Below, piece after piece: positions 1,951 through 6,306 of a stretch of DNA of 6,482 nucleotides. Each line of letters begins with the position of its first letter. Positions within the stretch are counted from its first letter, which is position 1. The translations under genes and the position numbers were made by a program. The stretch is from assembly GCF_006345805.1 (NCBI RefSeq), contig NW_021829351.1, positions 1-6,482 of the forward strand, in the 5' to 3' direction. The notes under the pieces were generated by a model that searched no databases, was not told the origin of the DNA, and saw only the letters and a list, made by a program, of their open reading frames with translations. Source of the DNA: Octopus sinensis (lineage: Eukaryota).

Positions 1951-2123
1951 ACTCTACTCTTTTACTCTTTTACTTGTTTCAGTCATTCGACTGCGGCCAT
2001 GCTGGAGCACCGCCTTTAGTCGAGCAAATCGACCCCCCAGGACTTATTCTTTGTAAGCCTAGCACTTATTCAATGGCTCTTTTTTGCCGAACCGCTAAGT
2101 TACGGGGACGTAAACACACCAGC
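1951..2123 (-). mobile_element. 3' half of SINE family B (5'-truncated)
   Basis: The reverse complement closely matches 3815-3985 (GCTGGTGTGTTT.CGTCCCC...CTTAGCGGTTCGGCAAAA...GCTCCAGCATGGCCGCAGTC.AATGACTGAAACAAGTAAAAGAG) and ends in a GTAAAAGA-type tail. Confidence 0.93.
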
Positions 2124-2209
2124 TTCTTCTTCTTTTGCTTCTTCTGCTCCTTCTTCTTCTCCTTCTCATTCTCCTCCTCCTCCTCCTCCTCCTTCTTCTT
2201 CTTCTTCTA

Positions 2210-2260: not shown

Positions 2261-2744
2261 CCAATCAGGACTCCCGCCATTAGCCACAAAGAATAATCTC
2301 TAATTCGAGCCTACTCTAAGCTACTAAGAATACATGTATGGCAATTTGAAGATCCACCCACCACACGCGATAGACTGGCGGTTGCACGGGTGCGAAAGCT
2401 ACGTTGTTATCCTCATTCCGTAAACGGTGGCTTTTTTAACGAGTGGAGAACTGAACCATCCTGGGGTACAGAGGATTCGCAATCCAAACTAGGGCCTGAA
2501 AGTTTTACCACACCATAGTGGGTTACACCATGGCTCCTCTGTTTTGTGGCAGAAGTAGGAAGAAAGAGTGAGAGAAAGTTGTGGTGAAAGAGTACAGCGG
2601 GGTTCGCCATCACTCCCCTGCCAGAGCCTCGTGGAGCTTAGGTGGTTTTGCTCAATAAACACTCACAATGCCCGGTGTGGGAATCGAAACCACGTTCTTA
2701 CGACCGCGAGTCCGCTGCCCTAACCGCTGGGCCATTGCGCCTCC
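2261..2744 (-). mobile_element. tRNA-derived SINE, family C (tRNA-Arg-like head); 3' boundary inferred
   Basis: The - strand starts GGAGGCGCAATGGCCCAGCGGTTAGGGCAGCGGACTCGCGGTCGTAAGAACGTGGTTTCGATTCCC. A-box TGGCCCAGCGG (2724-2734), D-stem GCCC/GGGC, B-box GGTTTCGATTCCC (2679-2691). 2545-2744 matches a recalled octopus SINE. 2261-2545 is included only because it leads into the (GAA)n tail. Confidence 0.8.
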
Positions 2745-2749
2745 ACCGC

Positions 2750-2779
2750 TGTTGTCGTTGATGATGGTGGTGGTGGTGG

Positions 2780-3238: not shown

Positions 3239-3562
3239 GTAAAGCAATGACAATATGAAGGAAAACCAAAAACAACATCAATTAATACGTATATAGACTT
3301 TAGCGGGGGTGGGAGAATATAACCAACCAATGGAGTTAAATAGAAAACAAAATCAGACACTTAGTCACGCAGAGAATGAGAATGTAAGCGAGAACTACTG
3401 ATATAGAGAGACGTCTAGGACGCGAATGAAAGAGGAGGGATGTGATAGAGATTGAAAGAGAGAGTGTGAGATAAGAAGGAGTGAGAAAATGAAGGAATGG
3501 TTAGTAAATTGTTAGATAGCTAGGGAAAACGAATGAATATTTTTCTTTATGTAGTTAGTATA

Positions 3563-3985
3563 GGCGCAGGAGTGGCTGTGTGGTAAGTAGCTTGCTAACC
3601 AACCACATGGTTCCGGGTTCAGTCTCACTGCGTGGCATCTTGGGCGAGTGTCTTCTGCTATAGCTTCGGGCCGACCAATGCCTTGTGAGTGGATTTGGTA
3701 GACGGAAACTGAAAGAAGCCTGTCGTATATATGTATATATATATATATATAAGTGTGTGTGTATATGTTTGTGTGTCTGTGTTAGTCCTCCACCAACATC
3801 GCTTGACAACCGATGCTGGTGTGTTTGCGTCCCCCTCACTTAGCGGTTCGGCAAAAGAGACCGATAGAATAAGTACTGGGCTTAGAAAGAATAAGTCCCG
3901 GGGTTGATTTGTTTGGCTAAAAGTGGTGCTCCAGCATGGCCGCAGTCAAATGACTGAAACAAGTAAAAGAGAAAGAGAAAGAGTA
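3563..3985 (+). mobile_element. Full-length tRNA-derived SINE, family B (octopus-type, CORE-like motif, internal microsatellite)
   Basis: Head GGCGCAGGAGTGGCTGTGTGG with A-box at 3573-3583 and B-box GGTTCAGTCTC at 3616-3626. TGGCATCTTGGGCGAGTGTCTT resembles the start of the CORE domain. Internal (AT)n/(GT)n at ~3726-3780, AAAAGAG-type tail, and a second copy at 1951-2123. Confidence 0.92.
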
Positions 3986-4088
3986 CTTGGAGTAAACAGA
4001 CGTATGATAGAGTTGCTTACTCATGGCCAGAGACACACGCAGGCATATTCATGCAAACAAAGGCATTCATTCGTTCCCCATACACAAA

Positions 4089-4178
4089 TAGAGAGTGGGT
4101 GAGAGGGAGAGAGGGAGAGAGAGTGAGAGAGAGAGAGTGACTGAGAAGCAGAGAGGGTGAAAAAGAGAGACAGACAGA

Positions 4179-4214
<36 letters not shown>

Positions 4215-4268
4215 TAAAGTGAGTGTGGAGAGAGAGACTGAGTGCGACTGAGAGACAGACAGACAGAT

Positions 4269-4299
<31 letters not shown>

Positions 4300-4354
4300 G
4301 TGAGAGAGAGAGTGACTGAGAAGCAGAGAGAGTGAAAAAGAGAGACAGACAGAG

Positions 4355-4393
<39 letters not shown>

Positions 4394-4540
4394 GAGATAG
4401 AGAGAGAGAGAGAGATAAAGTGAGTGTGGAGAGAGAGACTGAGTGCGACTGAGAGACAGACAGACAGATAGAGAGAGAGAGAGAGGGAGAGAGAGAGATA
4501 GTCAGACAGGCAAGCAGATAGATAGACAGACAGGTAGGCA
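4089..4540. repeat. Compound (GA)n/(GATA)n/(GACA)n array containing a ~180-200 bp tandem duplication
   Basis: Unique anchors repeat: GTGACTGAGAAGCAG at 4137 and 4312; GATAAAGTGAGTGTGG at 4213 and 4414; CTGAGTGCGACTGAG at 4238 and 4439. Confidence 0.95.
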
Positions 4541-5482: not shown

Positions 5483-5766
5483 ATATATTAATCAAGGAAA
5501 TTTCAACATAAATAATAATATATATATATATATTATCAGTCATAATAAAGGGTAAAATTAGTTAATTAATTAATAATTAATAATTTTACCAATATAATCA
5601 TTAATTTCAATAAATCAAAATAAAAAAAACGTGAAAATTTCATTAATATATATATATTATCAATAATAATGAAGAATAAAATTAGTTAATTAATTAATAA
5701 TTAATAATTTTACCAAATATTAATCAATGAAATTTCAACATAAATAATAAAACGTGAAAATTTCAT

Positions 5767-5798
<32 letters not shown>

Positions 5799-5855
5799 TA
5801 TCAATAATAATATTAAAGAGTAAAATTAATTAATTAATAATTAATAATTTTACCA
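5483..5855. repeat. AT-rich minisatellite: 3 diverged units (periods 124 and 140 bp), each ending in a ~40-bp quasi-palindrome
   Basis: TAATTAATAATTAATAATTTTACC ends at 5590, 5714 and 5854. AAACGTGAAAATTTCATTAATATATA and GAAATTTCAACATAAATAATAA each occur twice. Confidence 0.9.
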
Positions 5856-5953
5856 AGTAGTTCGGTATGTTAAAAGAACCATTATCGGTAAAAGAACTAT
5901 TATCTGTCAGATAAGTATGTTTCATTTTTCAGTGCTCTCAAATTGAAAATCTT

Positions 5954-6047
5954 GAATTACTGTACTGAAGAAGAGAATGGGAGAGTAGAAATATGATTTT
6001 ACATTTTTCACATCTCCCTTACTCTGAAACGCGTATACAGTTAATTC
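5954..6047 (+). ncRNA. Type I hammerhead ribozyme motif (Penelope-like/retrozyme-type minimal stem III)
   Basis: Stem I GAATTACTGTA (5954-5964) pairs with TACAGT-T-AATTC (6036-6047): 11 bp with one bulge. Core CTGAAGA at 5965-5971. Stem II 5972-5984/6013-6025 has 11 of 13 pairs plus a distal hairpin. GAAA at 6026-6029, palindromic ACGCGT stem III, and cleavage triplet GTA at 6033-6035. Confidence 0.85.
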
Positions 6048-6212
6048 GTTATTTTTTCTCTTTACCTGCGTGAGTTGTTGAGTATTGCTGTCTGGGAGAT
6101 TTTCTTATGGTCGTGAAATAGTAGTTTAACTGCTATTTCTAAAATTTCAGTGTGTGGTGAAGCAAATTTTGCTGAACCCTAATTTAATTATACTCATAAT
6201 TATAGAATTTTT

Positions 6213-6222
6213 GTATATATAT

Positions 6223-6288
<66 letters not shown>

Positions 6289-6303
6289 GTATGTATGTAT
6301 ATA
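6213..6303. repeat. (TA)n/(TATATG)n/(TATG)n microsatellite
   Basis: Directly visible. Confidence 0.95.
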
Positions 6304-6306
6304 TTG

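What the first reader, a model, noticed from the sequence alone, without database searches (positions are those of the whole stretch)
5954..6047. Structurally complete type I hammerhead ribozyme with an unusually long stem II and a palindromic stem III
Seen: all conserved core nucleotides are present in the right order (C3 U4 G5 A6 A7 G8 A9 at 5965-5971; G12 A13 A14 A15.1 at 6026-6029; U16.1 and A17 at 6034-6035). Stem I has 11 bp with one bulge. Stem II is a ~54-nt hairpin (11/13 bp, a 3x3 internal loop, then 7/8 bp closing a 6-nt loop). Stem III is only AC-GC-GU within the palindrome ACGCGU. Established: hammerheads of Penelope-like elements and metazoan retrozymes have this minimal palindromic stem III and cleave mainly as dimers. 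Predicted cleavage is after A6035 (GUA). The A-U pair at 10.1-11.1 and the GUA triplet are tolerated but non-optimal. Activity is not shown.
Basis: partly seen in the sequence, partly recalled or inferred. Interest (0 to 1): 0.85.

Follow-up and report, generated by a model that had tools for sequence, protein, structure and literature searches.

The report
Decayed hammerhead ribozyme in octopus-like repeat
The motif is a real type I hammerhead ribozyme sequence, but this copy is a worn, 5'-truncated member of a repeat family with thousands of copies that looks like a non-coding passenger of Penelope-like retrotransposons, so it is a variant of a known kind and not a new ribozyme.

Summary
CUGAAGA is at 5965-5971, GAAA at 6026-6029 and ACGCGU at 6029-6034. 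A17 is 6035, helix I has 11 bp with one bulge, and helix II is a 54-nt hairpin. A simple hammerhead descriptor finds only this site in the window and none in 1000 dinucleotide shuffles.

The motif lies in a 5'-truncated copy (5906-6217) of an interspersed repeat with at least 2385 candidate copies in a 2.72-Gb animal genome. The family consensus is a better hammerhead than the window copy. It has G10.1-C11.1, N7 is the only core position that varies between subfamilies, and helix II shows more compensatory changes than the controls do.

The insertions look Penelope-like: scattered 5' truncations, partial tandems, inverted truncated partners and (TA)n at the 3' end. None of 48 insertions that carry the hammerhead extends upstream past the predicted cleavage site of a preceding unit.

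No Rfam hammerhead model detects the family. Other repeat families in this genome carry the same long-helix-II, palindromic-helix-III design, and two of them are young (98-99% identical copies).

Self-cleavage was not tested, and no autonomous partner was found.

The parts
5906..6217 (+). 5'-truncated copy of the repeat family. It covers unit positions about 446-573, then 1-197, with a private 13-nt deletion after about 6045. The unit is numbered from the predicted cleavage site.
   Evidence: BLAST of the family unit against the window; copies in the genome
5954..5964 (+). Helix I, 5' strand (positions 2.11-2.1)
5965..5971 (+). Core C3 U4 G5 A6 A7 G8 A9 (CUGAAGA)
   Evidence: N7 is A, U, C or G among copies
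5972..6025 (+). Helix II: 4 bp (AGAG/CUCU), an internal loop where loop 2 normally sits, then an extended hairpin with a 6-nt loop
6026..6029 (+). Core G12 A13 A14 and A15.1
6029..6034 (+). Helix III palindrome ACGCGU. Within one molecule it gives A15.1-U16.1 capped by CGCG. Between two molecules it gives 6 bp.
   Evidence: RNAcofold
6035..6035 (+). A17. Predicted cleavage lies between 6035 and 6036.
   Evidence: Position in the motif. Cleavage itself was not tested.
6036..6047 (+). Helix I, 3' strand, with bulged U. The outer 2 bp are created by the private deletion.
5522..5892 (-). Three tandem copies (124-bp period) of the family's AT-rich 3' tail (unit about 200/233-299) in inverted orientation. 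Together they form an inverted, 5'-truncated partner lying head-to-head with the main copy.
6214..6304 (.). (TA)n-type microsatellite directly after the 3' end of the insertion, as in most copies

Best explanation
The site is a genuine type I hammerhead ribozyme sequence with the metazoan minimal-helix-III design. It is carried by a non-coding, non-autonomous retroelement family of about 573-bp units that was probably spread by Penelope-like element (PLE) enzymes. In the family's source RNA, helix I runs 6 bp to a bulged U. Helix II runs 4 bp to an internal loop and then continues as a long hairpin. Helix III is one A-U pair capped by the palindrome CGCG, so a stable helix III forms only when two hammerheads pair through ACGCGU. 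Such a dimer would cut after GUA, which is 6035/6036 in the window. That would give RNA starting at UACAG with a 5'-OH and an upstream fragment ending in a 2',3'-cyclic phosphate. The window copy is a dead insertion. It is 5'-truncated at unit position about 446 and lacks any partner hammerhead nearby. It carries private mutations (G10.1 to A, C11.1 to U at a CpG, and a 13-nt deletion). The sequence match, the family context and the insertion architecture are shown. Dimeric cleavage, its role in making the template's 5' end, and PLE mobilisation are inferred.
For: Motif and chance:
- There is one descriptor hit in the window and 0 in 1000 shuffles.
- The fold has z = -4.56.

Family:
- At least 2385 first-look candidates at 83-89% identity to the window copy.
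- The consensus reads CUGAAGA-GGAG...CUCC-GAAA-CGCG-UA, so it has G10.1-C11.1.
- At least 12 genomic copies match a strict 30-base core/stem pattern exactly, against 0 for the reversed-pattern control.
- N7 is the only core position with a shared variant: A 29, U 16, G 2, C 2. None of the 11 non-CpG core positions has a minor allele at 15% or more.

Pairing over 45 copies:
- 92.1% of cells are paired.
- 10 pairs have changes on both sides, against 3.9 +/- 1.4 in shuffles (0 of 500 reach 10) and 2-7 in slid controls.
- Specific cases: 10.3-11.3 goes from A-U to G-C in L066 and both L079 copies. A U-A pair restores a mismatch in L066 and L079:2011-2113. G-C goes to U-A in L033 and in one further copy.

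Geometry and dimer:
- 6 bp in helix I, 4 bp in helix II and a 1-bp helix III with a palindromic tetraloop match the published canonical metazoan type I design (PMC4209133, PMC7229834).
- The co-fold dimer is -61.3 kcal/mol against 2 x -26.9, with ACGCGU paired between molecules.

PLE-like context:
- Scattered 5' ends, partial tandems, inverted truncated partners and (TA)n at 3' ends, as described for PLEs (PMC8557442).
- The genome has canonical PLE-type hammerheads.
- It also has at least 4846 GIY-YIG candidates with open frames up to 883 aa.

Possible trace of cleavage:
- The 5' ends of 48 hammerhead-bearing insertions run from unit position 504 back to 22, at about 8 per 100 nt over the last 300 nt. 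None lies beyond the upstream cleavage site. P is about 3e-4 if that density continued.
Against: - No Rfam hammerhead model scores the window or consensus-like copies even at E <= 10, while positive controls in the same run do score: L039 at 48 bits and L046 at 34 bits.
- Genomic copies are mostly neutral relics. Core divergence (0.051) is only slightly below the background (0.077).
- Several changes look like decay, not selection. C11.1 sits in a CpG. G10.1 is A in about a quarter of copies, usually opposite C.
- Subfamily 2 carries an uncompensated U-U mismatch in helix II and an A-A mismatch in outer helix I.
- Each insertion has only one hammerhead, so a dimer would need a second transcript.
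- Only 2 of about 29 unbiased copies start at the cleavage site itself.
- No RT/GIY-YIG element with this sequence was found. Six PLE 3' regions show no similarity.
- Published PLE hammerheads cleave poorly in vitro (PMC4209133).
Confidence: 0.75

Rival explanations
1. Vestigial hammerhead. The family descends from a hammerhead-bearing element, but the ribozyme no longer works in it. What selection keeps is the long hairpin, for example as a reverse-transcriptase recognition structure or a small-RNA precursor.
For: - The compensatory changes are concentrated in helix II, including its extension, while helix I has only one.
- About a quarter of copies have A10.1, usually opposite C.
- There is one hammerhead per insertion.
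- Inverted duplications centre on the hairpin (L085).
- PLE hammerheads have low in vitro activity (PMC4209133).
- Naiad PLEs thrive without canonical hammerheads (PMC8557442).
Against: - All 13 invariant core positions are intact in the consensus.
- The only core position that varies between subfamilies is N7, the free one.
- The palindromic helix III and the 6-bp/4-bp geometry are kept.
- Unrelated repeat families in the same genome show the same full design.
- Rfam miRNA hits to the hairpin are insignificant, with E of 4-5.
Confidence: 0.13
2. Classical non-LTR retrozyme. On this reading the family lives as tandem arrays whose transcripts self-cleave to 573-nt monomers. These are circularised and copied by rolling-circle reverse transcription.
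For: - Partial tandems of up to about 1.4 units are found.
- The upstream limit of insertions lies at the cleavage site.
- A sister family in the genome does form direct arrays with 532-535-bp spacing at 99% identity.
- Retrozymes are reported to be PLE derivatives (10.64898/2026.07.22.740005).
Against: - None of 48 insertions holds two hammerheads, and no arrays appear among the top hits.
- The unit (573 bp) is longer than the published 170-400 nt (PMC7229834).
- A circular template predicts no fixed upstream limit.
Confidence: 0.08
3. Chance resemblance. An AT-rich hairpin-bearing repeat happens to contain CUGANGA and GAAA in the right places.
For: - The hammerhead consensus is short, and chance matches occur in large databases (PMC3088659).
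- Rfam models do not score it.
Against: - 0 hits in 1000 shuffles.
- The family consensus is closer to the canonical motif than this copy is.
- The palindrome and the helix lengths match the published design.
- The design recurs in unrelated families with different sequences.
Confidence: 0.04

Closest known systems
Canonical metazoan type I hammerheads with minimal palindromic helix III (newt/axolotl satellite HHR_Amex1, Schistosoma, PLE hammerheads; PMC4209133, PMC7229834, Forster et al. 1988 as cited there)
   Same: Type I topology and a full 13-nt conserved core. Helix I runs 6 bp to its loop or bulge, and helix II runs 4 bp to its loop. Helix III is a single A-U pair capped by a palindromic tetraloop, so it is expected to act as a dimer. 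The family consensus has G10.1-C11.1.
   Different: Loop 2 is replaced by an internal loop that continues into a hairpin of about 40 nt, making helix II 54 nt in all. The cleavage triplet is GUA, not GUC. [quoted passage not shown] Rfam RF00163 does not detect it.
Penelope-like elements and their pseudo-LTR hammerheads (PMC8557442, PMC4209133)
   Same: Variable 5' truncation, partial tandem copies that give terminal direct repeats, inverted 5'-truncated partners, association with (TA)n, and a hammerhead near the repeated part.
   Different: No RT or GIY-YIG ORF lies in or next to any copy examined. Each insertion has only one hammerhead. Six PLE 3' regions from this genome share no sequence with the family.
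Metazoan non-LTR retrozymes (PMC7229834; 10.64898/2026.07.22.740005)
   Same: A small, AT-rich, non-coding repeat with a type I hammerhead, thought to be mobilised by PLE enzymes.
   Different: The unit is 573 bp, against 170-400 bp. No arrays of two or more full units were seen. An unrelated sister family in the same genome does show arrays of about 534 bp.
'HHR_half_core' cases in Naiad PLEs (PMC8557442, Methods)
   Same: The two halves of the core lie 35-50 nt apart or more, so standard RNAmotif descriptors miss them.
   Different: Those cases were not resolved into a full three-helix structure. Here all three helices can be drawn and helix II covaries.

Membership tests
Hammerhead ribozyme, type I | Core C3 U4 G5 A6 N7 G8 A9 ... 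G12 A13 A14 | tested here: met
   Window 5965-5971 and 6026-6028. Intact in the family consensus.
Hammerhead ribozyme, type I | A15.1-U16.1 pair and H17 (not G) at the cleavage site | tested here: met
   A6029-U6034 and A6035. The pair is A-U in 43 of 45 copies.
Hammerhead ribozyme, type I | Helices I and II flank the core, with helix I open-ended | tested here: met
   Minimum-free-energy fold. 93% of helix I cells and 84-97% of helix II cells are paired over 45 copies.
Hammerhead ribozyme, type I | A stable helix III | tested here: inconclusive
   One molecule gives only 1 bp plus a CGCG loop (or 2 bp with an impossible 2-nt loop). The co-fold predicts a 6-bp helix between two molecules. This is a prediction only.
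Hammerhead ribozyme, type I | G10.1-C11.1 closing pair | tested here: not met
   The window has A5972-U6025. The family consensus has G-C. Over 45 copies the counts are G-C 17, G-U 10, A-U 1 and unpaired 15.
Hammerhead ribozyme, type I | Score at or above the gathering threshold of an Rfam hammerhead covariance model | tested here: not met
   No hammerhead hit at gathering or at E <= 10 for the window or for copies L010, L019 and L032. Controls L039 and L046 scored 48 and 34 bits.
Hammerhead ribozyme, type I | Compensatory base changes in the helices | tested here: met
   10 pairs have changes on both sides, against 3.9 +/- 1.4 in shuffles (0 of 500) and 2-7 in slid controls. The support is modest, because the copies are related and some changes are CpG decay.
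Hammerhead ribozyme, type I | Site-specific, Mg2+-dependent self-cleavage | not testable with these tools
   This needs transcription and cleavage assays.
PLE-associated hammerhead (Cervera and de la Pena 2014) | Palindromic 15.2-16.2 / loop 3 | tested here: met
   ACGCGU.
PLE-associated hammerhead (Cervera and de la Pena 2014) | Location in the flanking repeats of an element that encodes RT and GIY-YIG endonuclease | tested here: not met
   No long ORF in the window. The copies examined hold only the non-coding unit, which the unit BLAST covers end to end. Six PLE 3' regions have no similarity.
PLE-associated hammerhead (Cervera and de la Pena 2014) | Unpaired nucleotide between A9 and 10.1 | tested here: not met
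   In the consensus, A9 is followed directly by G10.1, which pairs with C11.1.
PLE-type insertion | Variable 5' truncation, partial tandems, inverted truncated partners and a microsatellite target | tested here: met
   The window itself shows an inverted partner (5522-5892) and (TA)n (6214-6304).
Non-LTR retrozyme | Tandem arrays (dimers to multimers) of 170-400-bp units, each with a hammerhead | tested here: not met
   None of 48 insertions holds two hammerheads, and the unit is 573 bp.
Non-LTR retrozyme | Linear and circular monomer RNAs in tissues | not testable with these tools
   No transcript data are available here.

The most novel reading that the evidence does not exclude
This genome, probably a cephalopod's, may hold a whole class of dimer-dependent hammerheads in which loop 2 has grown into a 45-65-nt hairpin. 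The class is spread over several repeat families with hundreds to thousands of candidate copies each. Two of those families have top copies 98-99% identical, and one forms tandem arrays of about 534 bp. Rfam and the standard descriptors largely miss the class. The hairpin extension may have a function of its own in PLE-mediated copying or in circular-RNA biology.
Probability: 0.3. Interest if true: 0.6.

Novelty: new variant of a known kind. Interest (0 to 1): 0.4.

Why it matters
Hammerheads in Penelope-like elements and retrozymes are well known, so the ribozyme itself is no surprise. Two points are useful. First, a family with thousands of candidate copies and a fully drawable hammerhead escapes every Rfam hammerhead model, because helix II is 54 nt long. 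Second, the same design recurs in unrelated and partly very young repeat families of this genome. That suggests hammerhead censuses of cephalopod-like genomes undercount. It may also shed light on the unresolved 'half-core' motifs reported in some PLEs. The young tandem family would be a better subject than this relic for testing whether such ribozymes shape the RNA templates of PLE-driven retrotransposition.

Tried and rejected
- Rfam at gathering and at E <= 10 on the window and on consensus-like copies gave no hammerhead. The weak miRNA and snoRNA hits (E about 4-7) are noise.
- ARAGORN on the window and on seven loci found no tRNA, so a tRNA-derived SINE head is not supported.
- I looked for insertions whose 5' ends pile up exactly at the cleavage site. 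Only L062 and L084 of about 29 do. Several others stop 10-30 nt upstream, inside helix II or the core. That direct signature of cleavage is therefore not there. Only the outer limit is.
- I searched for an autonomous partner. Six 3' regions of GIY-YIG-bearing elements share nothing with the family and hold no Rfam hammerhead.
- Exact-pattern scans of the metagenome and prokaryote genome collections found nothing, as expected for an animal repeat.
- At first I read the window's A-U at 10.1-11.1 and G-C at 5981-6016 as selected compensatory changes. I rejected that reading. Each is unique to this copy, and one partner is a CpG transition.

Full report
**1. The observation**

- CUGAAGA is at 5965-5971 and GAAA at 6026-6029.
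- The palindrome ACGCGU is at 6029-6034, and A17 is at 6035.
- Helix I pairs 5954-5964 with 6036-6047, giving 11 bp with one bulged U.
- Helix II is the 54-nt hairpin 5972-6025.

The minimum-free-energy fold of the stretch forms helix I and the long helix II at -26.9 kcal/mol. Its z-score is -4.56, and none of 200 shuffles folds as well.

I wrote a simple descriptor to test for chance. It requires CUGANGA, at least 4 bp closing a helix II of up to 80 nt, GAAA, A15.1-N(2-10)-U16.1-H17 and at least 5 bp of helix I. It finds this site alone on either strand of the window. It finds nothing in 1000 dinucleotide-preserving shuffles.

**2. What the window is**

The window has no ORF longer than 143 aa and is full of microsatellites and interspersed repeats. 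It is contig C5822 of a 2.72-Gb assembly with 13,516 contigs. The size, the repeat content and the thousands of GIY-YIG hits point to an animal. I suspect an octopus from the assembly statistics, but I did not verify that.

**3. The motif belongs to a repeat family**

- A 121-nt query around the motif finds 270 first-look candidates. The best 40 are 84-94% identical.
- The 312-nt stretch 5906-6217 finds 2385 candidates, at 83-89% identity.
- Aligning oriented copies with their flanks gives a unit of about 573 bp. I number it from the predicted cleavage site, so U1 is the T of TACAG. The hammerhead then occupies about U488-573 plus U1-16.
- The window copy covers U446-573 and U1-197. It is 5'-truncated, and it lacks 13 nt (CAGAGCCGGGTGG) that the other aligned copies have after window position about 6045.

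**4. The consensus is a better hammerhead than the window copy**

The consensus reads UACUGUA-CUGAAGA-GGAG...CUCC-GAAA-CGCG-U-A|UACAGUUAAU, so it has the canonical G10.1-C11.1 pair.

The window's A-U at that position occurs in 1 of 45 copies. C11.1 lies in a CpG and is often U. G10.1 is A in about a quarter of copies, usually opposite C. The window therefore combines two independent decay events. The G5981-C6016 pair is likewise unique to the window.

At least 12 genomic copies match a strict 30-base pattern exactly. The pattern covers the core, the base of helix II, helix III and the start of helix I. The reversed-pattern control gives none. In the held loci, 13 distinct copies still pass the full descriptor.

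**5. Evidence for constraint**

Genomic copies are mostly neutral relics, so little should be expected from them, and the signal is modest.
- Non-CpG divergence from the consensus is 0.051 in the core and 0.077 outside the hammerhead.
- None of the 11 non-CpG core positions has a variant shared by 15% or more of copies.
- N7, the one free core position, is A in 29 copies, U in 16, G in 2 and C in 2.
- Over 45 copies, 92.1% of the cells in my structure are standard pairs.
- Ten pairs show changes on both sides. Column shuffles give 3.9 +/- 1.4 (0 of 500 reach 10), and slid controls give 2-7.

Examples of the double changes:
- 10.3-11.3 goes from A-U to G-C in L066 and both L079 copies, with A-C intermediates in L088 and L035.
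- A U-A pair restores the subfamily-2 U-U mismatch in L066 and L079:2011-2113.
- G-C goes to U-A in L033 and in the copy at C1:92917934.

Against this, subfamily 2 carries an uncompensated U-U mismatch in helix II and an A-A mismatch in outer helix I. The double changes at helix III are CpG decay.

**6. Geometry and the dimer**

In the consensus, helix I has 6 bp before its bulged U. Helix II has 4 bp before a 3x3 internal loop (AAU/UAA). Helix III is A15.1-U16.1 capped by CGCG.

This is the published canonical metazoan type I layout: helix I 6 bp, helix II 4 bp, and helix III 1-2 bp with a small palindromic loop that is active as a dimer (PMC4209133). It also matches the axolotl HHR_Amex1 description of a single pair capped by a palindromic tetraloop (PMC7229834). 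The difference is that loop 2 continues into a further hairpin of about 40 nt.

RNAcofold of two copies gives -61.3 kcal/mol against 2 x -26.9, with the two ACGCGU segments paired to each other. The consensus behaves the same way. This is a prediction, not a measurement.

**7. Rfam**

No hammerhead family scores the window at gathering or at E <= 10 on a 301-nt slice. None scores the consensus-like copies L010, L019 and L032. In that same run L039 scores 48.2 bits and L046 scores 34 bits for RF00163. L046 carries an insert of about 63 nt in helix II. I read that as a limit of the models, not as evidence against the motif.

The genome does hold canonical PLE-type hammerheads of the form GUAC-CUGAAGA-GACCC...GGGUC-GAAA-CAUGUG-UC-GUAC.

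**8. Insertion architecture**

- Insertions end at U197 or at about U285-305. Most are followed directly by (TA)n.
- Their 5' ends are scattered.
- Many have a 5'-truncated copy upstream. It lies in the same orientation, giving terminal direct repeats, or is inverted head-to-head.
- The window shows the inverted form. Positions 5522-5892 are three tandem 124-bp copies of the family's AT-rich tail on the opposite strand. Positions 6214-6304 are the (TA)n.
- This is the pattern described for Penelope-like elements: pseudo-LTRs, inverted 5'-truncated copies and (TA)n targets (PMC8557442).
- The genome has at least 4846 GIY-YIG candidates with open frames up to 883 aa.
- No copy of the family that I examined carries an ORF. 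Six 3' regions of GIY-YIG-bearing elements show no similarity to it.

**9. A possible trace of cleavage**

Among 48 independent insertions that contain the hammerhead, the 5' ends run from U504 back to U22 of the preceding unit. Their density is about 8 per 100 nt over the last 300 nt. None lies beyond the upstream U1, and none contains two hammerheads.

If that density continued, the chance of seeing none in the next 100 nt would be about 3e-4. The limit is tied to position, not to length, because it holds for both 3'-end classes. This fits a template RNA whose 5' end lies at or just after a hammerhead cleavage site. It fits equally a transcription start inherited from the master copy.

A pile-up exactly at U1 is not seen. 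Only L062 and L084 start there. Several copies stop 10-30 nt upstream, inside the hammerhead.

**10. The long helix II is not unusual here**

Run over all 292 kb of held loci, the descriptor finds five motifs that are unrelated in sequence to this family. All have a helix II of 48-80 nt. Three have perfect 6-nt palindromes between A15.1 and U16.1: CAUAUG, CGGCCG and CAAUUG.

The CAAUUG type has at least 927 candidates. Its best 40 are 99% identical, and many lie in direct tandem at 532-535 bp spacing. It is a young, retrozyme-like array family.

The CAUAUG type has at least 1740 candidates at 98-99% identity, often as inverted pairs.

The window's family is about 8% diverged from its consensus. 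It is an older member of a recurrent design.

**11. Verdict**

This is a hammerhead of the known metazoan/PLE kind with an extended helix II, sitting in a dead copy of a non-autonomous repeat.

The sequence match, the family, the architecture and the modest covariation are shown. Dimeric self-cleavage, its role in defining the template's 5' end, and mobilisation by PLE enzymes are inferred. In the searched library only two to four papers mention hammerhead ribozymes together with octopus or cephalopods, and those listed do not appear to describe such motifs in cephalopods.

Noticed in passing
L089:2250-2390 (- strand); genome C6:12735521-12735661: An unrelated hammerhead-like motif with a helix II of about 58 nt, a 7-bp helix I and the palindrome ACAAUUGU. 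Its family has at least 927 candidates, the top 40 are 99% identical, and many lie in direct tandem at 532-535 bp spacing. It looks like a young retrozyme-like array family.
   Followed up: partly
L008:1940-2060 (- strand); genome C4601:8611-8731: Another long-helix-II hammerhead-like motif (GAAGG...CCUUC, palindrome ACAUAUGU, GUC site). Its family has at least 1740 candidates at 98-99% identity, often as inverted pairs 200-300 bp apart.
   Followed up: partly
L040:1902-1978 (+) and L088:1202-1261 (+): Two further descriptor hits with long helix II in flanks that were not selected for them. One has the palindrome ACGGCCGU. Copy number was not checked.
   Followed up: no
L089:1765-1846 (+): CUGACGA ... 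GAAA with the palindrome ACAUAUGU and a 4-bp helix I, about 1.5 kb downstream of a GIY-YIG ORF end and about 100 nt before a (TA)n run. It has an A-A mismatch at 10.1/11.1, so it is doubtful as a hammerhead.
   Followed up: partly
L085:1253-1789: Two copies of the family lie head-to-head as a near-perfect palindrome whose centre falls inside helix II. This looks like a snap-back or template switch at the hairpin during copying.
   Followed up: no
window 1958-2126 and 3812-3978: An inverted pair of a different repeat of about 170 nt, 87-89% complementary, about 1.7-1.9 kb apart. Stretches near 2600-2750 (- strand) and 3555-3640 look tRNA-like by eye, but ARAGORN finds no tRNA.
   Followed up: partly
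window 4075-4508: A purine-rich GA/GATA-type low-complexity block containing a duplication of about 190 bp (family D1). It coincides with a strong GC and AT skew.
   Followed up: no
window 5522-5892: The inverted tail of the family is itself triplicated with a 124-bp period. Each unit holds an AT-rich hairpin (GTAAAATTA...TAATTTTAC) that also ends most full copies of the family.
   Followed up: partly
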